A DNA stretch of 64,000 nucleotides from the IMG/VR virus record IMGVR_UViG_3300046660_000488, positions 1 to 64,000 of that record; one strand, written 5' to 3'. Shown piece after piece: positions 45,254 to 60,315 of this stretch (positions are counted from its first letter, which is position 1; each line of letters opens with the position of its first letter). The notes under the pieces are model-generated. The model was not told the DNA's origin and made no database searches. It saw only the letters and a program-made list of their open reading frames with translations. The position numbers and the translations under genes were made by a program.

Positions 45254-45476
45254 CGAACGCCTTGACGGCGCGCGCGAAACGCTCCGCGAAGGTTGGGCCT
45301 CGCGGAGGTTTCGGCACGGCGTTGAAGTTACTACCGCCGTTGGAGCCGCAGCACAGGTTGGTGCAGGTGATGTAGCCGTCCGAGCAATTCTCGTCCGCCA
45401 CTTCGGCGTCGGTCTCAAGCTCTTTCCGCATGCCGTCTTCACCGCAGATCGGACAGTTCACCCACACCCTCGTCAT
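45240..45476 (-). CDS. small Zn-ribbon protein
   Basis: CPIC ... CTNLCC. Confidence 0.65.
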   Translation of the reverse strand: MTRVWVNCPICGEDGMRKELETDAEVADENCSDGYITCTNLCCGSNGGSNFNAVPKPPRGPTFAERFARAVKAFAKAF

Positions 45477-47050
45477 TCGATCTCACCCTTCACGGCCCGG
45501 TTCAGCAGGTCGATGGTGTTCTGACGCCCGTAGGCGGCCGTGAACGACCCGAAGCGCGGACCCTGCTCGTCACCGAACAGAACCTCGTACAGGCTCTGGA
45601 ACCATGCCCGCAGGGGCTGGAAATCGTGAGCCTTGCCGACCTCGTAGACCTCGAATTGATAGGCCTCCGGGTCGAGCCCATCAGCCATCTTCTCGAACCG
45701 CTCGACCAGATCGAGGAAGGCCGTGGCCTCCTGTTCGGTCGGGGCGCGTCGCTGGCGATCCTGTAGCAGGATGTCGCGGGCATAGTTGATCGCCCCGTCG
45801 ATCAGAGGGGTCAGGAAGGCCAGATCACCGGCCGACAGCGCCTTGTACTGTCGCAGGTAGGCGATCAGGCTCTCACGATCCTTGGCGCCGGACACCACCG
45901 CCAGATTCAGCAGCAGGCCATAGGTCACGTCGCTGCTGTAAGGCGGCGGCGTATCCCCGTGGATGTGCCAGATCGGCGAGTCGAGCTTGGCCGCGCCGGT
46001 GAGAGCCGGATAGGCGACCAGCGCCTTCAGGTACTCGTCGGTGGCGCGCGGAACCGTCTTGGCCGTGAAAATCTTGGCCTCGCGCGGCTTCAGGAACATG
46101 AAGTAGGCCAGCGGCCCCGTGGTGCTGTAGCGGCTCCACGTCTCCATGCTCATGCCGTTGCCGGACGACTTCGATTGCTTGCGGCCCTCGTCGTCGAGGA
46201 ACAGTTCATAGGTGAACGTCATCGGAGGCTTGCCGCCGATGGCCTTGCAGATGCGCGACGACAGCACGGCGCTGTCCATCAAGTCCTTGCCGTGCATTTC
46301 GTAGTCCACGTCGAAGACGACCCAGCGAGCGGCCCAGTCCACCTTCCACTGAAGCTTGGCGGCGCCTCCGCGCACGTCGATCAGCATGTCCACGCCCGCG
46401 TCGAACGTCGAATCCTTGAAGAACAGGCCGCGTCCGGCGTCGCCGAAGTCCTCAGACGGTCGGACGCTGGCATCGGCCAGCAAGACGCCGGAGTAAGCCA
46501 GCGGCATGAAGGCCGAGTACGTCGCCTTGCGGGCGTCACGCAGGGTCGGGAGCATGATCGCCTGAACAGCGTCGTAGCTGAGCAAGACGCGCTGTAGCAC
46601 GTCGTCGAACACGCCGTTGCGATAGCACTCGGTCGCCGAAATTAACTCGACGTCCTCGAAGCCCGACTGCTCGATGAAAGCCTTCAGCGCCGCGTTGTTG
46701 CGGTGCGCGAAGCTCTCGTACTCACCGAAAGGATCGGGGACCATCGTCAGCGGCTTGCCGAGGTGTTCGGCCATGCTTTCGGGCATGCCGTCCGGAACCT
46801 TGCGGAAGCCGTCGTAGTCGTCGCTGAAGACGATGAGGCGCGTGGCGACCGTGCCGCCCGTCAACTCGATGAAGGCGTCGCGAACCATCTGGGTGCGCGT
46901 GACCTCGCCGAACGTGCCGATGTGCGGGGCGCCCGAAGGACCAAAGCCGGTCTGGAACGTGACCAGCTTCTTGTCACCGACACGCTTCAGCAGAGCACGA
47001 GCCTGCTCGAACGGCCACGACTTGGCGTTCTGCGCGTCAGGATTGGTCAT
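45473..47050 (-). CDS. class I lysyl-tRNA synthetase
   Basis: SWPFE.A, TGFGPSGAPHIGTFGEV.RT, SDD.DGFRKVP, KLQWKVDW..RW, DYEM.GKDL, KQSKSSGNG, GPRFGSF. Confidence 0.95.
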   Translation of the reverse strand: MTNPDAQNAKSWPFEQARALLKRVGDKKLVTFQTGFGPSGAPHIGTFGEVTRTQMVRDAFIELTGGTVATRLIVFSDDYDGFRKVPDGMPESMAEHLGKPLTMVPDPFGEYESFAHRNNAALKAFIEQSGFEDVELISATECYRNGVFDDVLQRVLLSYDAVQAIMLPTLRDARKATYSAFMPLAYSGVLLADASVRPSEDFGDAGRGLFFKDSTFDAGVDMLIDVRGGAAKLQWKVDWAARWVVFDVDYEMHGKDLMDSAVLSSRICKAIGGKPPMTFTYELFLDDEGRKQSKSSGNGMSMETWSRYSTTGPLAYFMFLKPREAKIFTAKTVPRATDEYLKALVAYPALTGAAKLDSPIWHIHGDTPPPYSSDVTYGLLLNLAVVSGAKDRESLIAYLRQYKALSAGDLAFLTPLIDGAINYARDILLQDRQRRAPTEQEATAFLDLVERFEKMADGLDPEAYQFEVYEVGKAHDFQPLRAWFQSLYEVLFGDEQGPRFGSFTAAYGRQNTIDLLNRAVKGEIE

Positions 47051-50393: not shown

Positions 50394-50441
50394 CTGCACA
50401 GGATAGGCGATCTGGTAAACCAGAGCAAGGGTCCAGATACG

Positions 50442-50474
50442 AAAAATCCCCGGTGAGCCTTGGCTGACCGGGGA
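50442..50474 (-). terminator. intrinsic terminator
   Basis: TCCCCGGT.AGCC-aa-GGCT.ACCGGGGA-TTTTT on the minus strand. Confidence 0.75.
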
Positions 50475-50725
50475 CCAACGAACGCGCCGGAGCGCGCTTG
50501 CTTTGGGCGGTAAGCATTAACCCGCTCAGACTCCCGGCGCCGGGTTTCTGACCAGCCGAATCCCGAGGGATAGGACTGTCCTTAATGACTTAGGAGTACC
50601 TTGAGAAGCATGGCCGGTCAAGGCATCCCAGAGGGCGCGCGAGACATTACGTCCCCGGTGGAGCGCCGACCCGCCGCATGCCTCCGGCCGGAAAGCATGC
50701 GGAAAACTGGTGAGGGGTCGCGCAC

Positions 50726-51040
50726 AAAATAAGAGAGCCGCTTTCCGTTTGGTGACCCCGGTTTGAAGGGGATCAGGTCCACGGTCAGCGGCTCTCCGCC
50801 CAATCTGATTGCTCAGTCGGGTTGCCTCTTACGACCCGCCGTTTCCGGCTCCGCTGGAGGACTTTTTGGCTTCTCCACTGGGTTTGAACCTTGTGGATGG
50901 CCGGTAGCTTTCGACCTTTCGGTCTAGGCCTCGCACTGGGGTTCGACGCCAGTACCGCTTTAGTCCGTAGCTTTGTGGGCCGTAGGACTTCCTTGGGGTT
51001 CGAAGCCAAGGGTTTGCTTCGACTTTCGTCTTAGCGGGGT
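50726..51040 (-). ncRNA. structured RNA segment with repeated T-loop-like and GNRA hairpins
   Basis: Four TC(G/A)AACC-loop hairpins and two GAAA hairpins; ends in a GAGAGCCGCT/AGCGGCTCTC stem plus TTATTTT. Confidence 0.5.
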
Positions 51041-51044
51041 CTCG

Positions 51045-52205
51045 ATGGCTTGAGACTACAGCCATAGAACAACCGATCTTTACCCAAGGGTGTTCTCAAG
51101 GTTGCGGCCCTGAGTTTCTTGGTTATCCACGGCCAGCCCACGTGTTACGGCAGGTCAGGTCGTATCGGTCCGTGTCGCCTTGTTCCTACCTCGCGGTAGA
51201 CGAGTGGCTTTTCTCGCGTCGCTTCATACTACTCGACACTTCCCATCCCTCCTGCTTCGCGGGCAGTTCACGGCTGCAACACCGTTAAGAAATCTTCCGT
51301 ATCGACAAGGGCGACTTTGCCGGTCATTCCCCTGCCCCAATTCTCTTGCGAGTTGGGGATTAGACACTTTTCGTATGAAGCCGGGTCAGGCTTGTGCTTT
51401 TGTTTTGAGGACGGTTTTGACACCGCGACCTACAGCTTGGAAGGCTGTCGCTCTACCACTGAGCTACATCAAATCCACTGGGACGTGCTGACCCGTTGCT
51501 CCATAAGGCTTTCACCCTACAGAATACAACACACCCCGTTCGTTTCATCCTGCTAAGACTACTCCGAGAAACCTTTGGACAACGTGCCTGAGCCCGTCAC
51601 CCTCGATCATGCCGCACGCCCTTTCCCGCTAAGGATCGAACCTTACGACTATCCGTTACTTTCTCCCATGGATGGGTTTGCGTGCCATGGATACCGGGTG
51701 CGAACCCGATTTGAGCTACCTTCCTCGTCGGTTAGGCAACTTCCTATCCCCTCTCGGAGACCCATGACCCCACCTTCCGGAATATCTCCCATCCTCTGGT
51801 AAGGCGTGGAAGACCCTCTCGGGAAGCTCGGACCTGTATAGGTGGACAGCCACCGAAGTGACAGCGGGGTTATGTGGACATACCCCCTTTGAGCCCATTG
51901 CTGGGCCTCATCCTTTACGGCGCTATACCGCCGTTCCGCACCACAAGTGATTACCGTTCCTCTTACGAATACCCGAAGGCATCGTATTTGACCCGGCTCT
52001 GCTTGTGGGCAGATACGCTCAGCACTGTGGATCGTCTTCTTGCGAAGGCCATCCGAAGAAACTAAAGCGCGCCATCCGAAAACGTCGCTACTTCGATCTC
52101 ATCACATGGTCTAAGCGGTCGTTCGAAACCACTTTGCTGCCTCTCGACAGCAGTACCAAGCCACGTCTCCGGAGCGAACCCCGTTGCCGTGCCGATCATT
52201 GACCG
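51045..52205 (-). ncRNA. GOLLD-like giant ncRNA (~1.15 kb)
   Basis: TTGACG-N17-TAAGTT promoter; no coding signal; dense hairpins with GNRA/UUCG loops; embedded tRNA-like element; 3' motifs (GTGTTGTATT...GCAAC, AAAAGTG, GAGTAG, GTGGATAA, GTAGTCTCA) recalled from memory as GOLLD-like, not searched. Confidence 0.6.
51403..51473 (-). tRNA. tRNA-Gly(TCC)-like element embedded in the large RNA (probably not a functional tRNA)
   Basis: Canonical D arm GCTC-AGTGGTA-GAGC and ACAGC-CT-TCC-AA-GCTGT; aberrant T loop; AT-rich acceptor; no CCA. Confidence 0.7.
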
Positions 52206-52212
52206 GAGAACC

Positions 52213-52241
52213 AACTTACCGACTTCTTTATTCCTCGTCAA
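52213..52241 (-). promoter_or_regulatory. sigma70-like promoter for the giant ncRNA
   Basis: TTGACG-17 nt-TAAGTT preceded by an A-tract. Confidence 0.7.
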
Positions 52242-52532
52242 CCACTTTTTTTCGTTCGATCCGAAGATTTTCGCGAACCAGTTTGTCAACCCGGATTTCC
52301 GGAAGCCGCTGAGGTGTTTCCCTCGACCGACCGTGAAATCAACATACCCAGACCCCCTGATCGGTGCAACACAAAAAGTGCGAAAAACCGTCATTTGCCT
52401 GCATGATCTGTGGACAAGTCTGAAACATCGTTTGATTTCAAAGACTTGCGACGCTTCTACCAGATCGTCTTCGATCAATTAACGTGCGTTCGCGCGGATT
52501 TGGTTCAGAGAATGGTCATGCTTCGGACGATT

Positions 52533-53649: not shown

Positions 53650-56600
53650 ATGACGACTCATTACTCCGGCCTTCAATTGCGCGGCAACTTGTTCATCAAC
53701 AAGGAACTGCAACCGGCTGTCGTTTGGGTTTCTCCTCTGCGTAAGGCTCTGGGTCCGTATGGCTCGGACCTTAATCCCAGCAAAGATGTTGACATCACGT
53801 TCGTCGCTCACGCAAGCGACCCGAACGCTGTGCTTGTCTATTCCGTCGTCGTGGGGGTTGTTCCGGACGGACTGACGCTCGATTCAGCAACCGGTAAGAT
53901 GGTTGGCACGCTGACCGCGTCCGAAGGTCTGGCCGAATTCACCGTGCGCGCCACGATCCAGAACACTCAACTGTTCGCCGAGCGCCACTTCCGCATGGTC
54001 ATCGGCAACGCCCCGCCGCCCGTCTGGATCACGCCCGCTGGCCTGATCGACGAAGTCGGTGAGAGCGAGACCTACACCACCACCCTGCTGGCCGAAGACC
54101 CCTACGAGCTTCCGGTCACCTATTTCCTCGTGGGCGGCTCCCTGCCGCCGGGCATGTTCCTCAACAGCACCACGGGCCAAATCTACGGTTCGACGCCCGA
54201 CCTCGACGATGACATGATCTGCGACTTCACGGTCTCGGCGTCGAACAACTCGCGCAACACCACGCGCGATTTCACGATCTACCTGACCGCCACGCCGCCC
54301 GGCGACGCGGCGTACTGGATCACGCCTGCCGGTGACGTGGGCGAAGGCTACGAACTGACTGAATTCACGTTCGACCATCTGGAAGCCATCGACCCGAACG
54401 CCCTGCCGATCACCTACGTCCGCGTCGCCGGTAACATTCCGGACGGCCTAATGGTCGATGCCAACAGCGGCGTGATCTACGGAACCATGGGTCCGCAGGC
54501 CGACGACACCCTGTTCAAGTTCATCATGGGCGCGCGCACGTCGGTCTACACGACCAAGCGCATGTTCACGATCATGGTCAAGCACGTCACGCCCCCGAGC
54601 TTCGGCGACGACAACCCGACACAGATCACGATGCGCGGTCTGGAGAACGAGGTGTTCTACAGCAACGCCGTGCACGCCACGAGCCCGACGCCGATCCCGA
54701 TCACCTACACGATCACGAACCTTCCGACCCCGCTGATCTTCAGCCCGTTCACGGCTGAAATCCACGGCATCATGCCGCCGGTCATCGAAGACGCCGACCA
54801 CATCTACAACATGGTCGTCACGGCCTCGAACGGCATCAAGTCAAAGAGCGTCACGGTCCAACTGACCGACGAGAAGAACCTGCCGCCGTATTTCACGGTC
54901 TCGGGATCGCTCGGCGAAGCGCTGGGCGGCAAGCCGTTCAACGCGCCTGTCCCGCTGGCCATCGACCCCAACGGCGTCCAGACCGTCTACACGCTGCTGA
55001 ACCCGGAAGACCTGCCGGAATCCATCACGTGGGACGCCAGCGTCGGCCTGCTCACGGGTACGTATCCGCCTGCCCCGACCGAAGACGTGATCACCACGTT
55101 CCAACTGCAAGTCTTCGACGGCGTGTTCACGACCAATGCGACGCTGACGATCACGTCGTGGCTGAACACGGAGCCGGAATGGATTACCGCACCGGGCCAG
55201 ATCGGCACGATCATCGAGAACCACAACGGATCGTTCGTGGTTGAAGCCCGCGATCCACAGAACGAGCCGATCATCTACTCTCGTGTCGGCGGCGCCTTCC
55301 CGCCGGGCATGGACATTGACCCGAACACGGGCGCGATCAGCGGCCCTGACGTCGGCCCGGTTCTCGATGTCGATTTCGACATCTACGACTTCGTCATCCG
55401 AGCCGACGATGGCGTGCTGTTCACCGACCGCGCCTTCCGCATCGTCGTGACCAAGGACTACCCGCCGATCTGGGACACGCAGCCGGGCGTCATCGTTGAC
55501 GTGCTCGCCGGTAAGCAATTCACCTTCCAGCTTGAGGCCCACGATCCGAACGGCACGACGCCGGTCTATTCGGTGATCGACGATGGCGGTCTTCCGATTG
55601 TCGATCCGACCACGCAACTTCTCTACGAAGAGAGCGGCGTGATCATCAACGGTCGCACCATCCGCGCCAAGATGCCCCAGCCGTCCAACCCGGCCGATGA
55701 GTCCGAAGACTTCAACCTCATCATGTCCATTGATGATGGCTACAACCCGCCGGTTGAGCGCACCTTCACGCTCCGGACCAACCGCAACACGCCGCCGGTT
55801 TGGAACACCAACATCTACGCCAGCAACTTCGTGGTCGTGCCGACCACGGCCAACATCGCCACCTATCAAATTGGCAACCCGCTGGTTAAGACCGAAACGT
55901 TGTCGAACGGCAACGTGGTCATCTACTCGCTGCTCGACCAGTACGAGACCGAAGTAATCGACCTCCAGCTTGGTGCTGACGATCCGCAGACCGGCGTGGA
56001 CAGCCTCTACTACTTCTACTCGGATTCGTCGTCCGTCTTCGAATTCAACGGCCAAGAGGGCGTTGGTGATGACGGCGTGCTGTTCATCAACCAGAACACC
56101 GGGCGCCTGACCGGCCGTGTCCCGACCGTGGATGCCGACAAGTTCTGGCACATCAACGTCACGGCTTACGACAAGACCGAAGTCTCGATGGAAAACCGCT
56201 ACTACGGCACGCCGCAGCGGTTCCTGCTCTCGACCCGCTTCAACAAGCCGCCGGAGTGGATCACCGCGCAGAACATCGGCCGCGTCGAACGTCTGGCCTA
56301 CACCCTGCAATTCAACGCGATCAACAAGGGCAACCTGCCGGAAATGCAGTACGTGCTGAACAGCGGCGTGCTCCCGGCCAACATGACCCTGACGAACACG
56401 GGCGTCCTGTCCACGACCCTGCCGCCTAACAAGACGGAAGCGGTCGAAGAGGACAAGACCTACACGTTCGCGGTCACGGCCAACAACGGCATCAAGCAGT
56501 CCACTAAGTCGTTCAACTTCACGGTCTACAAAAACCTCGAACCGGTGTGGGAACCCGCGACCCTCGAAGGTCTGGGCCAAATCCCGTTCACCGGCCAAAT

Positions 56601-59600
56601 CTCCGCGACCGATCCGAACCAAGGCTTCGGCGATCCTCTGGTTTACACCATCGTGGACCGCTCGCAGGTTCCGTCGTCGGTCAAGTTCAACATCGCCGAT
56701 CCGTTCGGCGCCTCGGTGGTGTCCTACCAGACGTTCGACGCCGACTATGTCGATTACAAGGATGCGGCCCAGTGGTCGTTCGTTGGCAACCCCGCGCTGG
56801 TTCCGGGCAAGTTTGGCAACGCCGTCAGCATGGATGGCACGAGCTACCTGACCGCCGAAGTGGGCGCTCTGGGTCAATCGCCGTTCACGTTCGAGACGTG
56901 GTTCAAGCGCGACGGTGGCGGTCCGGTGCAGCACCTGATCACGCTGGGTGATCTGGGTGAAAACGGCGTCAGCCTCTACCTCGACAACGGCGTTCTCAAG
57001 CTGGACGAAGACACGATCAACGTCCTGAACGGGACCGCGTCGATCTCCGACACCGCGTGGCATCACGTGGCGCTGGTCCGCGACGGCAACGACTACACGA
57101 TCTATCTGGACGGCGTCGTTGACGCGCAGATCACCATGCCGACCGTCGCGTCCCTCTCCGCGACGACGTTGCTGCTTGGCTCGTTCGGCATCACGCCGGA
57201 CACGCTGTTCACCGGCGCTCTGGATGATTTCCGCCTGACAGCCGCCGCTCGCTACACGCAGGCCTTCACGGCGCCGACCAAGGCGTTCGACCGCACGATC
57301 ACGGGAGTCATCACCGGCAACCTGCCGCTGGTGCAAGCCGACGCCTATTACCCGTTCGACGTCAGCGTCTCCGACAATCTCGTCAGCGTTCCGGCCTCGT
57401 TCACGATCCACAACATCCACGACCAAGACCCGATGTGGAGCACGCCCATGGGCCTGATCTACAGCAACTTGGAAGACACGCCGTTCACGTTGACTGTCGG
57501 CGCGGCCGATCCGGAAGCCAACCAAATCGCGTACTCGCTGTTCTCGGGGACCTTCCCGTTCACGCTGAACTCGGTCACGGGTGAGATTTCGGGCACGCTT
57601 CCGTCTGTCTCGACCGATACCGACTACGACTTCACCCTGCGCGCGTCGGATGGCATCCATATCTCGGATCGCAGTTTCCGCATCACGTCTGAAGACAACC
57701 TGCCGCCGGTCTGGGTGTCGTGCAGCACCACGATGGACATGCACGCTCTTGGTGGCGAGTTCTCGTCCTACCAGTTCGAGGCTACCGACCCGAACGGCCG
57801 TCCGACGCTGACCTACGCCATCACTGGTGGCACGACGCCTCCGGGCCTCAACTTCGGAACGGGTGGAGCCCTGACGGGCACGTTGAACACCGTTCAGGCC
57901 GACCAAGACTACACCTTCGACGTCACTGTTTCTGATGGCGTCTTCTTCGTGCCGCGCACGTTCACGTACCGCGCCCTGCTGAACCGCGCGCCGTATTACG
58001 TCCCGAACGCGACGACGATCCTGACCCAGTTCGAGCAGACGTTCATCGCCGATACGCTCGACCCTATCGACATCTACGACCCGGATGGTTCGGAACTGAC
58101 GATCCAAGTCCAGCCGCCGCAATTCCCGCTCCAGTACCACGTTGACAATGCGGGAACGGATCACGCGACTGTTTGGATCACGGGCGGTTCTCTGCCTGCC
58201 GTGATGACCGACACCACGTACCAGATGACAATTCTGGCCGACGATGGCGTCAACTTCCGCTCGCAGCAATACGCCTTCCGCGTCAAGTTCAACTCGCCGC
58301 CGTCGTTCACGTCGCCTGCAACGTTCCCTGACGCGGTCGAGCAGACTCCGTACTATGCCGTGGCCAACGCCGTCTCGAACGGCATGCCGGTGTTCTACGC
58401 CGTCGTCGGCGGAATGCTTCCTCCGGGCCTGACCCTGAACGTAGCCAACGGCGCGATCACGGGTACGGCGCCGCTCGTCGATGATGACCAGCAGTTCCCG
58501 TTCCAACTCCAAGCCACGACCGGCATCAAGGCGACTGTGCAGGACGCCGTCATCACGGTCCGCAAGAACCTGCCGCCGGTGTGGCTGACGACGACGCTCG
58601 CCAACGTGATGGAGAACACGGTCATCACGCCGTTCCAACTGGTGGCGACCGACCCGAACCATCAGGCGATCACCTACACGTGGCTGAGCGGCTTCCTGCC
58701 GCCGGGCCTGACGGCCAACTACGTCATCAACCCGAACACGGTGACCATCATCGGCAACACGCCGATCTTGGCCAACGACACGGTCTACAATTTCCGCGTC
58801 GGCGCGTCGGACGGCTACATCCGCACGGACCGCGATTTCGTCCTGACCGTGAAGTACAACCAGCCGCCGGTCTGGGTGACCAATGCTGGCCTGATCGCCA
58901 CGGTCAACGAACAAGACAGCCTCAGCAACCAGACGCGCGTCATCGCGACCGATCCGGAAGTGCAGGGCATCACCTACGCGATCCACAACACGGCTGCATG
59001 GCCGGGCTGGCTGACGCTGCAAACCAATGGCTTCCTGACTGGCACGGCGCCGCAGACCGCCAACGGTTTCACGACCGCTTTCGAGATCGACGCCAGCGAC
59101 GGCAACCGCTTCGTCACGCGCCAATTCTCGATCAACGTTCAGCACGTCGGCACACCGCCGACTTGGATCACGCCTGCTGGCCAAATTCTGGCTGGAGACG
59201 AAGGTAACTCGGCCGTCTTCACGCTGGTCGCCAACGACAATGTCTACCACGACACGGTGACCTACGCGCTGAACTCGACCGGGTTCCCGAGCACGATGAC
59301 GCTGCTGTCCAACGGCTACATCTACGGCACGTACCCGAGCATTTCGACGACGACCACGTACACCTTCGACGTGGCCGCAATCAACGTCTTGGCCGAAAAG
59401 CGTATTCGCCAATTCAGCATCACGTCGAACAACGTCGATTACCTGCAAGTCACCAGCCCGACCGGCGTCAATACGTACTATGGCAAGGGCGATGTCGTTC
59501 CGATGACGACAGAAGGCGAATGGACGGTTACCGTCCTGAAGCCTCTGAAGCTGAACGGCAAGCTCTGGGGCGCTGGCGGCGGCACGACCAACGGTGGCGC

Positions 59601-60315
59601 TGGCGGCTTCACGACGGGTGACACGGCTACCCTCACGACCGGAACGATCCTCCGGGCATGGGTCGGCGGCGGCGGCTTCGTCGGTAGCCCGACCCTTGGG
59701 CACGACGGTCCCTTCGGCAATGGCGGCAACTGCGGACGTCCCAACGGCGGTGGCATTTCTCTCGGCACGGGCGGTGGTCTCACCGGTCTGTTCCTAAGCT
59801 CCGTCTCGCAAGGCAACGCTCTGCTCGTCGCGGGCGCTGGCGGCGGCGGCGGCACGTCCGGTCCAGCGGCTGGCGCTGGTGGCGGCACGGTCGGCGCGAA
59901 GGGTAACGACTCCGGAAACGGTGGCGGCGGCTTCGGCGGCACGCAAACCAGTGGTGGTGCACGTGGTGGATCGTCCGGTTTCGACACCAACTCTCTGGGT
60001 GGTAGCGCGCTTACAGGTGGCCGTGGTGCGGCCAATATCTCGTCGATTTACTCACCCGGCGGCGGCGGTGCAGGTTACTGGGGTGGTGGCGCCGGTTACG
60101 GCAACAACCAATGGGGCGGCGCCGGTGGCGGTGGTTCGGGCTATCTGGCTGCGAGCATCACCAACGGTTCGCTCACGGCCGGTTCCGGTACGACGCCCGC
60201 TAACGCCAACGATAGTGACCGCCTTACCTACGCACCCAATGCCGGTAGCCCCGGCTTGTCGAACACGTCGAACTCACAAGCTCCGGCGGGTCTCATGGTC
60301 CTTCGGATTCTCTAA
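53650..60315 (+). CDS. giant virion structural protein (tail fibre/baseplate-like): tandem Ig/cadherin-like repeats, LamG domain, Gly-rich C-terminus
   Basis: TAAATA at 53616; repeats N..P.W.T..G ... A.DP ... Y....G.LP.G ... G.I.G ... F...A.DG ... R.F; FTFETWF...WHHVALVR...DDFR; WGAGGG Gly-rich tail. Confidence 0.9.
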   Translation: MTTHYSGLQLRGNLFINKELQPAVVWVSPLRKALGPYGSDLNPSKDVDITFVAHASDPNAVLVYSVVVGVVPDGLTLDSATGKMVGTLTASEGLAEFTVRATIQNTQLFAERHFRMVIGNAPPPVWITPAGLIDEVGESETYTTTLLAEDPYELPVTYFLVGGSLPPGMFLNSTTGQIYGSTPDLDDDMICDFTVSASNNSRNTTRDFTIYLTATPPGDAAYWITPAGDVGEGYELTEFTFDHLEAIDPNALPITYVRVAGNIPDGLMVDANSGVIYGTMGPQADDTLFKFIMGARTSVYTTKRMFTIMVKHVTPPSFGDDNPTQITMRGLENEVFYSNAVHATSPTPIPITYTITNLPTPLIFSPFTAEIHGIMPPVIEDADHIYNMVVTASNGIKSKSVTVQLTDEKNLPPYFTVSGSLGEALGGKPFNAPVPLAIDPNGVQTVYTLLNPEDLPESITWDASVGLLTGTYPPAPTEDVITTFQLQVFDGVFTTNATLTITSWLNTEPEWITAPGQIGTIIENHNGSFVVEARDPQNEPIIYSRVGGAFPPGMDIDPNTGAISGPDVGPVLDVDFDIYDFVIRADDGVLFTDRAFRIVVTKDYPPIWDTQPGVIVDVLAGKQFTFQLEAHDPNGTTPVYSVIDDGGLPIVDPTTQLLYEESGVIINGRTIRAKMPQPSNPADESEDFNLIMSIDDGYNPPVERTFTLRTNRNTPPVWNTNIYASNFVVVPTTANIATYQIGNPLVKTETLSNGNVVIYSLLDQYETEVIDLQLGADDPQTGVDSLYYFYSDSSSVFEFNGQEGVGDDGVLFINQNTGRLTGRVPTVDADKFWHINVTAYDKTEVSMENRYYGTPQRFLLSTRFNKPPEWITAQNIGRVERLAYTLQFNAINKGNLPEMQYVLNSGVLPANMTLTNTGVLSTTLPPNKTEAVEEDKTYTFAVTANNGIKQSTKSFNFTVYKNLEPVWEPATLEGLGQIPFTGQISATDPNQGFGDPLVYTIVDRSQVPSSVKFNIADPFGASVVSYQTFDADYVDYKDAAQWSFVGNPALVPGKFGNAVSMDGTSYLTAEVGALGQSPFTFETWFKRDGGGPVQHLITLGDLGENGVSLYLDNGVLKLDEDTINVLNGTASISDTAWHHVALVRDGNDYTIYLDGVVDAQITMPTVASLSATTLLLGSFGITPDTLFTGALDDFRLTAAARYTQAFTAPTKAFDRTITGVITGNLPLVQADAYYPFDVSVSDNLVSVPASFTIHNIHDQDPMWSTPMGLIYSNLEDTPFTLTVGAADPEANQIAYSLFSGTFPFTLNSVTGEISGTLPSVSTDTDYDFTLRASDGIHISDRSFRITSEDNLPPVWVSCSTTMDMHALGGEFSSYQFEATDPNGRPTLTYAITGGTTPPGLNFGTGGALTGTLNTVQADQDYTFDVTVSDGVFFVPRTFTYRALLNRAPYYVPNATTILTQFEQTFIADTLDPIDIYDPDGSELTIQVQPPQFPLQYHVDNAGTDHATVWITGGSLPAVMTDTTYQMTILADDGVNFRSQQYAFRVKFNSPPSFTSPATFPDAVEQTPYYAVANAVSNGMPVFYAVVGGMLPPGLTLNVANGAITGTAPLVDDDQQFPFQLQATTGIKATVQDAVITVRKNLPPVWLTTTLANVMENTVITPFQLVATDPNHQAITYTWLSGFLPPGLTANYVINPNTVTIIGNTPILANDTVYNFRVGASDGYIRTDRDFVLTVKYNQPPVWVTNAGLIATVNEQDSLSNQTRVIATDPEVQGITYAIHNTAAWPGWLTLQTNGFLTGTAPQTANGFTTAFEIDASDGNRFVTRQFSINVQHVGTPPTWITPAGQILAGDEGNSAVFTLVANDNVYHDTVTYALNSTGFPSTMTLLSNGYIYGTYPSISTTTTYTFDVAAINVLAEKRIRQFSITSNNVDYLQVTSPTGVNTYYGKGDVVPMTTEGEWTVTVLKPLKLNGKLWGAGGGTTNGGAGGFTTGDTATLTTGTILRAWVGGGGFVGSPTLGHDGPFGNGGNCGRPNGGGISLGTGGGLTGLFLSSVSQGNALLVAGAGGGGGTSGPAAGAGGGTVGAKGNDSGNGGGGFGGTQTSGGARGGSSGFDTNSLGGSALTGGRGAANISSIYSPGGGGAGYWGGGAGYGNNQWGGAGGGGSGYLAASITNGSLTAGSGTTPANANDSDRLTYAPNAGSPGLSNTSNSQAPAGLMVLRIL

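What the first reader, a model, noticed from the sequence alone, without database searches (positions are those of the whole stretch)
50726..51040. Modular T-loop/GNRA repeat RNA directly 3' of the GOLLD-like RNA
Seen on the minus strand: four related hairpins (CTTCGAACCCCAAGG, GTCGAACCCCAGTG, GTTCAAACCCAGTGG, CTTCAAACCGGGG) at + coordinates near 50995, 50938, 50880 and 50759. Two related GAAA hairpins are interleaved (CTAAGAC-GAAA-GTCGAAGC and CTAGACC-GAAA-GGTCGAAAGC). The segment closes with a 10-bp stem and TTATTTT. Inference: a duplicated tertiary module, either a 3' extension taking the RNA to ~1.5 kb or a separate ncRNA, perhaps a multivalent protein sponge or tRNA-elbow mimic.
Basis: partly seen in the sequence, partly recalled or inferred. 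Interest (0 to 1): 0.6.

Follow-up and report, generated by a model that had tools for sequence, protein, structure and literature searches.

The report
Hairpin-array 3' tail on phage GOLLD RNA
A giant soil phage carries a GOLLD RNA (a large cage-forming RNA of unknown function) with an unusual 320-base tail of nine hairpins, four capped by tRNA-like loops and four by GNRA tetraloops; the tail is real but so far seen only in one narrow lineage.

Summary
On the minus strand, 51035..50726, nine hairpins lie directly 3' of a divergent GOLLD RNA. Four carry the loop motif [U/G]UCRAACC, four carry GNRA tetraloops, and the last is an 11-bp-based compound hairpin followed by UUAUUUU. The window is the start of a 578-kb phage genome with terminal repeats.

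A 1.6-kb metagenome contig (L016) has the same tail. Its stems differ but still pair, its GNRA loops change while staying GNRA, and a 33-nt block is identical. Contigs from three metatranscriptome studies run from the GOLLD core into the tail, so transcription does not stop at 51045.

The tail is lineage-specific. Sister phages (L003, L006, L027) have about 65 nt plus a terminator there. In most other loci of this GOLLD subclade tRNA genes follow, in 12 of them within 25 nt. No Rfam family, tRNA included, matches the tail, and no second copy exists in the phage.

Best reading: a co-transcribed accessory 3' domain (an expansion segment) of GOLLD that grew partly by hairpin and module duplication. 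Its function is inferred only: tertiary or quaternary contacts, or a multivalent display of T-arm-like hairpins. Formal covariation statistics are weak because only two full sequences are in hand. It is a new variant of a known kind, of moderate interest.

The parts
51047..51537 (-). Conserved 3' domain of a divergent GOLLD RNA (Rfam RF02032). Its last hairpin (P27, GGCUGUAGUCUCAAGCC) ends at 51047.
   Evidence: cmscan gives 129.6 bits, E 4.2e-35, covering model positions 1-416, below the gathering score of 150. The relative L016 scores 137.5 and L003 scores 159.3.
51403..51473 (-). tRNA-like insert in the GOLLD linker, with a UCC anticodon-like loop and a degenerate T arm.
   Evidence: Rfam tRNA 56.7 bits. 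ARAGORN does not call it. The anticodon loop differs in L016.
51538..52298 (-). GOLLD 5' domain; the 5' end is not determined.
   Evidence: It aligns with L016 over its whole length. An RNA-library contig (X4, record 16) reaches 52298, close to the edge of the laid stretch at 52300.
51016..51035 (-). H1: GNRA hairpin GCUAAGAC-GAAA-GUCGAAGC.
   Evidence: In L016 it is UCUAUGAC-GUAA-GUCAUAGA, a perfect 8-bp stem whose loop is still GNRA.
50991..51011 (-). H2: T-loop-like hairpin CCUUGG-CUUCGAACC-CCAAGG.
   Evidence: The stem is identical in L016 and the loop reads CUUCGAAAC. The X2 variant 51004 A>C makes the loop CGUCGAACC. It is paralogous to H4 (z = 5.8).
50962..50989 (-). H3: irregular hairpin closed by GUCC/GGAC and preceded by AAGUCCU.
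   Evidence: In L016 the same outer stem encloses GAGC-CUUCGAUAA-GCUC, a further T-like loop.
50933..50955 (-). H4: T-loop-like hairpin GUACUGG-CGUCGAACC-CCAGUGC.
   Evidence: The L016 stem is GUGUAAGG/CCUUACAC, so different letters still pair. In X4, 50955 C>T together with 50933 G>A turns G-C into A-U, and 50947 C>A turns GUCGAAC into UUCGAAC.
50906..50930 (-). H5: GNRA hairpin GACC-GAAA-GGUC inside GGC...GCU. It is the core of a 33-nt block, GAGGCCUAGACCGAAAGGUCGAAAGCUACCGGC.
   Evidence: The block is 100% identical in L016 while the flanks diverge. No change is listed in it for the RNA-library contigs X4 (record 14, all differences listed) or X5 (record 17, listing incomplete).
50868..50902 (-). 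H6: the T-arm-like hairpin closest to the tRNA form, GGC..CCAC-AA-GG-UUCAAAC-CC-A-GUGG..GCC.
   Evidence: In L016 the outer GGC/GUC stem is kept but the cap is GCUC-GCAA-GAGC.
50824..50862 (-). H7: long irregular GNRA hairpin, AAAAGU-CCUC..GCGG.GCCG-GAAA-CGGC..UCGU..GAGG-CAACCC.
   Evidence: In L016, CCUC/GAGG becomes CCUU/AAGG, GCCG/CGGC becomes GCCA/UGGC, and GAAA becomes GCAA. The module is present twice in L016 (z = 6.4). X5 50851 C>T turns a G-U pair into A-U.
50799..50821 (-). H8: GNRA hairpin CCCGA-CUGA-GCAA-UCAG-AUUGGG.
   Evidence: In L016 it is CCC..CGG-GAAA-CCG..GGG, with two compensatory pairs.
50726..50797 (-). H9: compound terminator-like hairpin with an 11-bp base and a cap CCCC-UUCAAACC-GGGG, followed by UUAUUUU.
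   Evidence: -37.9 kcal/mol. The RNA-library contig X5 record 17 ends at 50780. No RNA-run contig lies in 50400-50720, while the DNA run X3 covers 50404-50583 and 50695-50844.

Best explanation
The segment is the 3'-terminal accessory domain (an expansion segment) of a divergent GOLLD RNA encoded by a 578-kb soil or rhizosphere phage.

It is transcribed as part of the same RNA, at least about 1.57 kb long. It runs from P27, the last GOLLD hairpin (ends at 51047), to an intrinsic-terminator-like hairpin with a U-tract at 50797-50726.

It consists of nine hairpins:
- Four are capped by the tRNA-T-loop-like motif [U/G]UCRAAC(C).
- Four are capped by GNRA tetraloops.
- One (H3) is irregular.

It grew at least partly by duplication. 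H2 and H4 are paralogues, and the H7-H8 module varies in copy number between relatives.

Shown: its anatomy, its strand, its conservation in close relatives, its absence from sister lineages, and its contiguity with GOLLD in RNA libraries.

Inferred: the exposed T-like and GNRA caps serve as docking modules. They would either make tertiary or quaternary RNA-RNA contacts on the multimeric GOLLD cage (10- to 14-mers in solved relatives), or display many T-arm-like hairpins to a tRNA-recognising factor. The tail occupies the slot where most related GOLLD genes are followed by real tRNA genes.
For: - GOLLD identity of the upstream RNA: (E 4e-35, full model).
- Genome context: a 578,292-bp virus record with terminal repeats and 69 tRNAs.
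- Strong fold: z = -6.1.
- Clustered loop motif.
- Homologous tail in L016. blastn gives 78% identity over 154 nt. RNAalifold finds 52 shared pairs, 7 of them with changes on both sides. GNRA loops change but stay GNRA, H1 GAAA to GUAA, H7 GAAA to GCAA and H8 GCAA to GAAA. A 33-nt block is identical.
- The X4 variant makes a G-C to A-U swap in H4.
- RNA-library contigs bridge the GOLLD/tail junction in three studies: X4 at 50858-51563, X5 at 50780-51181 and X2 at 50972-51452. None lies beyond the terminator.
- No promoter-like or terminator-like site lies at the junction.
- Sister lineages place a terminator about 65-80 nt after P27.
- In 23 of 35 loci of the subclade tRNA genes follow within about 350 nt of P27, in 12 of them within 25 nt.
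- Paralogy of H2/H4 and of the H7-H8 modules.
- Frame-breaking indels against L016 and no protein homologue exclude coding.
Against: - Only two full sequences and three partial variants are in hand. The formal covariation test is not significant: 135 of 500 shuffles reach the observed score.
- RNA-library contigs are unstranded assemblies and could contain DNA. They show neither the true 3' end nor whether the tail is later cleaved off.
- Loop position 1 toggles between U and G. H2, H4 and H9 lack the canonical G-C-closed 7-nt loop.
- H6's T-like cap is a GCAA tetraloop in L016, so individual caps are not strictly required.
- Nothing tested here bears on function.
Confidence: 0.6

Rival explanations
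1. The tail is a separate small or medium ncRNA of about 320 nt. It is either made from its own promoter or released from the GOLLD precursor by processing, and it acts independently of GOLLD.
For: The Rfam GOLLD model ends at 51047. The tail is absent from most GOLLD genes, so GOLLD does not need it. In sister lineages the same slot holds tRNAs, which are normally cut out of precursors.
Against: Only 11 nt separate P27 from H1, and no promoter-like site is found there. RNA-library contigs from three studies span the junction. The tail is never found away from a GOLLD gene, neither in the phage nor in 355 kb of loci.
Confidence: 0.15
2. The tail is a decayed tRNA gene array. The T-arm-like hairpins are relics of tRNA genes that once followed GOLLD, with no present function beyond termination.
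For: tRNA genes follow P27 in 23 of 35 related loci. The loops read like T-loops (UUCGAAC, UUCAAAC). The motif starts lie 57-61 nt apart.
Against: The tRNA model finds nothing in the tail even at E up to 10 on 336 nt, and ARAGORN finds nothing. GNRA caps and stems are kept under sequence change, and a 33-nt block is invariant, which points to selection on a non-tRNA structure. H7-H8 type modules have no tRNA counterpart.
Confidence: 0.1
3. The tail is only an elaborate terminator or 3' stabiliser. A stack of stable hairpins would protect GOLLD from 3'-to-5' exonucleases, with loop sequences irrelevant.
For: It ends in a terminator-like hairpin. Sister lineages also have two small hairpins before their terminator. 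The caps are partly interchangeable, as H6 shows in L016.
Against: Loop classes are conserved: every tetraloop stays GNRA, and the motif [U/G]UCRAAC recurs. An invariant 33-nt block is not expected for a mere physical barrier.
Confidence: 0.12
4. It is a chance or compositional artefact, or a short protein-coding gene.
For: ORFs of 74-78 aa overlap the region.
Against: The fold has z = -6.1 and the motif clusters. The region is conserved with indels of 1, 3, 1, 6, 4 and 1 nt against L016 that break every frame. No protein homologue is found.
Confidence: 0.02

Closest known systems
GOLLD RNA (Rfam RF02032; Weinberg et al. 2009; cryo-EM structures in Kretsch et al. 2025, PMC12286853, and reviewed in PMC12990946)
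   Same: The RNA directly upstream matches the full GOLLD 3'-domain model. It has a tRNA-like insert in the linker, lies in a phage near tRNA and aminoacyl-tRNA synthetase genes, and uses GNRA loops as GOLLD does.
   Different: The described family consensus ends at P27. A 320-nt hairpin array after P27 is in neither the Rfam model nor the papers read here. It occurs in only one narrow lineage of the subclade examined.
tRNA T-arm / T-loop structural motif
   Same: The loops read UUCGAAC or UUCAAAC followed by C, as in tRNA positions 54-61. H6 has the G-C closing pair and a 7-nt loop.
   Different: There is no acceptor, D or anticodon arm and no tRNA model score. H2 and H4 have 9-nt loops with C/C flanks. 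Position 54 is G in H4 and toggles between U and G among relatives.
tRNA gene arrays placed directly 3' of GOLLD in related phages
   Same: Same genomic and transcript slot, starting 11-25 nt after P27, with repeated T-loop-bearing units.
   Different: The units here are not tRNAs, cannot be aminoacylated, and are interleaved with GNRA hairpins.
Expansion segments and peripheral domains of large RNAs (rRNA, RNase P, group I/II introns)
   Same: A lineage-specific insertion of hairpins capped by GNRA or T-loops at the periphery of a conserved core, varying in module number between close relatives.
   Different: It is appended at the 3' end rather than inserted in a helix. Its contacts are unknown.
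Bacterial Y-RNA-like YrlA (tRNA mimics; PMC4201824)
   Same: Phage- and bacteria-encoded ncRNAs that carry tRNA-like T-arm features.
   Different: There is no Rfam match, no D-arm/T-arm pairing module and no Ro-binding stem. The resemblance is recalled from memory and was tested only by the blank Rfam scan.

Membership tests
GOLLD RNA (RF02032), for the RNA to which the tail is attached | Significant full-length match to the covariance model | tested here: met
   129.6 bits, E 4.2e-35, model positions 1-416 of 416.
GOLLD RNA (RF02032), for the RNA to which the tail is attached | Score at or above Rfam's gathering threshold (150 bits) | tested here: not met
   The window scores 129.6 and L016 scores 137.5. 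Relatives sharing the same clade-specific sequence pattern do pass: L003 at 159.3, L036 at 204.9 and L040 at 197.7. It is a divergent member.
GOLLD RNA (RF02032), for the tail itself | The segment is part of the family's consensus structure (P1-P27) | tested here: not met
   The model ends at 51047 and the tail lies wholly outside it. It is absent from 33 of 35 loci of the subclade.
T-loop hairpin (tRNA type) | Loop sequence compatible with the U54-A58 pair and the U55 C56 turn (UUCRA) | tested here: inconclusive
   H2, H6 and H9 fit. H4 has G at position 1 in the window and L016 but U in X4. H2 has G in X2.
T-loop hairpin (tRNA type) | 7-nt loop closed by a Watson-Crick (G53-C61) pair | tested here: not met
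   Met by H6 only. H2 and H4 have 9-nt loops with C/C flanks, and H9 has an 8-nt loop. In L016, H4 does have a G-C-closed loop.
T-loop hairpin (tRNA type) | Three-dimensional T-loop fold with an intercalated base | not testable with these tools
   This needs probing or a solved structure.
GNRA tetraloop hairpins | 4-nt loop G-N-R-A on a Watson-Crick stem, kept as GNRA when the sequence changes | tested here: met
   Window loops are GAAA, GAAA, GAAA and GCAA. L016 loops are GUAA, GAAA, GCAA, GCAA, GAAA, GCGA and GAAA.
tRNA | Cloverleaf detectable by the covariance model or ARAGORN | tested here: not met
   No tRNA hit in 50715-51050 at E up to 10. ARAGORN finds none.
Rho-independent terminator | G+C-rich stem immediately followed by a U-tract | tested here: met
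   An 11-bp base stem (9 Watson-Crick G-C/A-U pairs of high G+C) followed by UUAUUUU. The simple scan missed it because the 'loop' is a 44-nt inner hairpin.
Rho-independent terminator | Transcripts end there | tested here: inconclusive
   RNA-run contigs stop at or before 50780 and none lies downstream, whereas a DNA-run contig crosses the site. Contigs cannot show true RNA ends.

The most novel reading that the evidence does not exclude
The tail is a multivalent T-arm decoy or display. On a GOLLD cage of 10-14 protomers it would present some 40-56 T-arm-like hairpins plus GNRA docking loops. It would functionally replace the covalently linked tRNA arrays of sister lineages. It might capture a host factor that recognises the tRNA T-arm or elbow, such as a tRNA-modifying or tRNA-processing enzyme or a tRNA-targeting defence nuclease. 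Alternatively, it might tether real tRNAs to the cage. If so, it would tie the unknown function of GOLLD to tRNA biology.
Probability: 0.12. Interest if true: 0.8.

Novelty: new variant of a known kind. Interest (0 to 1): 0.45.

Why it matters
GOLLD is one of the largest bacterial and phage ncRNAs. It was recently shown to form RNA-only cages, and its function is still unknown.

This tail is a natural variant in which the slot normally filled by tRNA genes holds an array of T-arm-like and GNRA-capped hairpins. That is a hint that what matters downstream of GOLLD is something shared by tRNAs and these hairpins, the T-arm. It also offers a compact construct for testing the idea by cryo-EM of the RNA with and without the tail, and by pull-downs.

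The finding also shows that GOLLD tolerates large 3' appendages. That is relevant to how the cages are decorated and to engineering them. If the tail proves to be only a stabiliser, the finding is a modest note on the variability of GOLLD ends.

Tried and rejected
Searches that found no relatives:
- INPHARED phages by blastn: only tRNA-like hits to the embedded tRNA-like part.
- IMG/VR pattern scans with the invariant H5 20-mer and with the junction of the GOLLD end and the tail start: 0 hits.
- GTDB genome scans with the same two patterns: 0 hits.
- The neighbouring 177-aa protein has no relative in IMG/VR or in the 5.8-billion-protein set, where it finds only itself.

Trick that failed: I used spurious ORFs over the RNA as protein queries to pull related contigs. 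It found nothing.

Checks that narrowed the claim:
- A generic GOLLD core pattern hit one unrelated locus, L002, which has no GOLLD.
- The tail is not a tandem repeat at the sequence level: Tandem Repeats Finder finds none and autocorrelation is not above shuffles.
- Covariance model R1 (H1-H5) finds only the window and L016 among 53 loci, and one place in the phage.
- No known RNA family fits. Only noise-level hits to mir-485 and PyrR204 fall on the terminator hairpin.

Readings I dropped:
- My promoter guess (TTGACG, 17 nt, TAAGTT near 52233-52205). An RNA-library contig reaches 52298, so the 5' end stays open.
- A kink-turn reading of the invariant H5 block. I checked it by hand and rejected it because the tandem G-A geometry does not fit.
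- The 1:1 T-loop/GNRA pairing idea. It is weakened by the T-like to GCAA swap of H6 in L016.

Literature: Weinberg 2009 (PMC4140389) and Morgado 2020 (PMC7549688) are not held and could not be read.

Full report
**Context**

The window is the first 64 kb of a 578,292-bp IMG/VR virus record with direct terminal repeats, estimated complete. It has 59% G+C and 69 tRNA genes.

On the minus strand Rfam's GOLLD model matches 51537..51047 over its whole length (129.6 bits, E 4e-35, below the curated 150 bits). A tRNA-like insert lies at 51473..51403. The finding lies directly 3' of that match.

**Observation**

Reading the minus strand and folding pieces of it gives nine hairpins between 51035 and 50732:

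| Hairpin | Coordinates | Sequence or description |
|---|---|---|
| H1 | 51035-51016 | GCUAAGAC-GAAA-GUCGAAGC |
| H2 | 51011-50991 | CCUUGG-CUUCGAACC-CCAAGG |
| H3 | 50989-50962 | GUCC...GGAC, irregular |
| H4 | 50955-50933 | GUACUGG-CGUCGAACC-CCAGUGC |
| H5 | 50930-50906 | GACC-GAAA-GGUC within GGC/GCU |
| H6 | 50902-50868 | cap GG-UUCAAAC-CC |
| H7 | 50862-50824 | long irregular hairpin capped GCCG-GAAA-CGGC |
| H8 | 50821-50799 | CUGA-GCAA-UCAG within CCC/GGG |
| H9 | 50797-50732 | 11-bp base, cap CCCC-UUCAAACC-GGGG |

H9 is followed by UUAUUUU at 50732-50726.

- The fold is far better than shuffles (z = -6.1).
- The octamer KTCRAACC is not enriched in the window as a whole (12 found, 11.4 expected). 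Four of the 12 sit within 245 nt on one strand, each in a hairpin loop.
- The strand is fixed by four points: GOLLD is on this strand, every tetraloop reads GNRA only on this strand, H4 and H7 contain G-U pairs, and the U-tract is on this strand.

It misses two further GNRA hairpins, H7 and H8.

**Is it conserved?**

A pattern from the GOLLD core of this subclade retrieved 41 metagenome loci, and another retrieved 10 viral loci. One locus, L016 (1,597 nt), is a close relative. Its GOLLD 3' domain is nearly identical and it carries the same tail.

In the tail the two sequences differ in ways that keep the structure:
- H1 changes its stem and GAAA becomes GUAA.
- H4 has a different but fully paired stem.
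- In H7, CCUC/GAGG becomes CCUU/AAGG, GCCG/CGGC becomes GCCA/UGGC, and GAAA becomes GCAA.
- H8 has two compensatory pairs and GCAA becomes GAAA.

RNAalifold finds 52 common pairs, 7 of them changed on both sides. A 33-nt block around H5 is identical in both.

With only two rows the formal test is weak. 135 of 500 shuffles reach the observed covariation. I therefore treat the structure as well supported by several lines of evidence but not statistically proven.

Partial further variants come from laid contigs. In X4, 50955 C>T together with 50933 G>A turns a G-C pair of H4 into A-U, and U-G becomes U-A. In X5, 50851 C>T turns a G-U pair of H7 into A-U. One listed X5 change gives an A/C mismatch in H4, but the X5 list is incomplete.

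**Is it one RNA with GOLLD?**

- Only 11 nt separate P27 from H1, and no promoter-like or terminator-like site is found there.
- Contigs from three metatranscriptome studies cross 51047: X4 at 50858-51563, X5 at 50780-51181 and X2 at 50972-51452.
- No RNA-run contig lies in 50400-50720, while a DNA-run contig (X3) crosses the terminator.
- These are unstranded assemblies from RNA libraries, so they show contiguity but not true ends.
- Sister phages L003, L006 and L027 have the same GOLLD clade and the same synteny with a class I lysyl-tRNA synthetase at 56% identity. They carry two small hairpins and a canonical terminator 65-80 nt after P27. GOLLD transcripts of this clade therefore run past P27 anyway, and the window's tail looks like an expansion of that short 3' region.

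**Distribution**

Among 35 loci of the subclade with a located GOLLD end (five of them hold 210 nt or less of downstream sequence):

| What follows P27 | Loci |
|---|---|
| tRNA gene within 25 nt | 12 |
| tRNA gene at 76-120 nt | 6 |
| tRNA gene at about 300-350 nt | 5 |
| T-run or terminator within about 40-95 nt | 6 |
| This tail | 2 (window, L016) |
| None of these seen in the downstream sequence held (100-366 nt) | 4 |

Model R1 (H1-H5) finds nothing else in 355 kb of loci and only one place in the phage. Pattern scans of IMG/VR and of GTDB genomes are blank. The tail is thus derived and narrow in distribution. Relatives of it occur in rhizosphere, soil and ice samples.

**Modularity**

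- H2 and H4 are significantly alike (14 of 15 identical around the loop, z = 5.8).
- The H7-H8 module occurs once in the window and at least twice in L016 (z = 6.4-7.0).
- Other unit pairs are not significantly alike, and there is no sequence-level period.
- The motif starts lie 57, 59, 61 and 60 nt apart if AGGCAACC of H7 is counted. That inclusion is a post hoc choice.
- Caps are partly interchangeable. H6's T-like cap is GCAA in L016, and H3 gains a T-like loop (CUUCGAUAA) in L016.

**What it is not**

- Not tRNA or any other Rfam family.
- Not coding, given frame-breaking indels against L016 and no protein homologue.
- Not a second copy of any GOLLD part.

**Mechanism (inferred)**

Solved GOLLD RNAs form 10- to 14-mer cages held together by kissing loops, A-minor and tetraloop contacts. 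Their tRNA-bearing linker points inward (PMC12286853, PMC12990946).

A 3' domain rich in GNRA and T-like caps is the kind of element that makes such contacts. On a multimer it would be displayed in many copies. It sits in the slot otherwise used by tRNA genes, which makes a T-arm-related role attractive. No result here tests that role.

The U/G toggle at loop position 1 and the non-canonical loop sizes caution against calling these true T-loops.

**Verdict**

This is a real, structured, co-transcribed, lineage-specific 3' expansion of a GOLLD RNA. It is a new variant of a known kind with unknown function, and I rate its interest as moderate.

Noticed in passing
window 50440-50600 (-); L003:700-850; L006:1470-1625(-): A second conserved structured element lies downstream of the GOLLD terminator. 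It has three hairpins (CUGGUCAG..CGGCGCCGG..CUGA.CGG, then UUACCG..AAGC, then a CCCGGUCAGC..GGCUCACCGGG terminator with a U-run). It is shared with the sister phages that lack the tail, and 6 pairs are changed on both sides among 3 sequences. Only noise-level Rfam hits fall on it (sX11, anti-hemB). It is a candidate separate small RNA.
   Followed up: partly
window 51403-51473 (-): The tRNA-like insert in the GOLLD linker has a UCC (Gly-like) anticodon loop and a degenerate T arm (GUCAAAA), and ARAGORN does not call it. In L016 the anticodon loop reads CCAUCAC, so it may be a structural tRNA mimic rather than a working tRNA.
   Followed up: partly
G000:C1:109999-110155 (outside the window): The phage encodes 69 tRNAs, including two adjacent ones with a CUA anticodon, which ARAGORN labels 'Pyl'. 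These may be amber suppressors, so TAG may be read through in part of the genome. I named no alternative code.
   Followed up: no
window 52274-52279 (-) and L016 about 45-55 in RNA sense: A site in the far 5' region is complementary to the H2 loop in both relatives, with matching differences. In the window GGUUCG faces loop CGAACC. In L016 GUUUCGAA faces loop UUCGAAAC (8 nt). This may be a 5'-3' or intermolecular kissing contact. It is a post hoc observation resting on two sequences.
   Followed up: partly
window, 15 sites (e.g. 6543, 20782, 37285, 50858, 50984): The heptamer AAGTCCT occurs 15 times against 4.9 +/- 2.1 expected, and 0 of 100 shuffles reach that count. Two of the sites start modules of the tail. 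The rest are unexplained.
   Followed up: no
L025, L042, L051 (about 350 nt after the GOLLD end); L021, L036 (about 300 nt): Other GOLLD lineages carry different conserved stretches of 300-350 nt between P27 and the first tRNA. GOLLD 3' appendages may therefore be a more general, unexplored feature. They show no similarity to this tail.
   Followed up: no
window 45473-47050 (-) and 53650-60315 (+): Two notable genes flank the region. One is a class I lysyl-tRNA synthetase (Pfam PF01921, E 2e-98). The other is a 2,221-aa protein with 12 He_PIG Ig-like repeats, a Laminin_G_3 domain and an ALK/LTK glycine-rich domain.
   Followed up: no
L020:1-203: A metagenome contig joins a GOLLD of this subclade to a piece of eukaryotic LSU rRNA. 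This is probably a chimeric assembly, possibly of a metatranscriptome, which I could not check.
   Followed up: no
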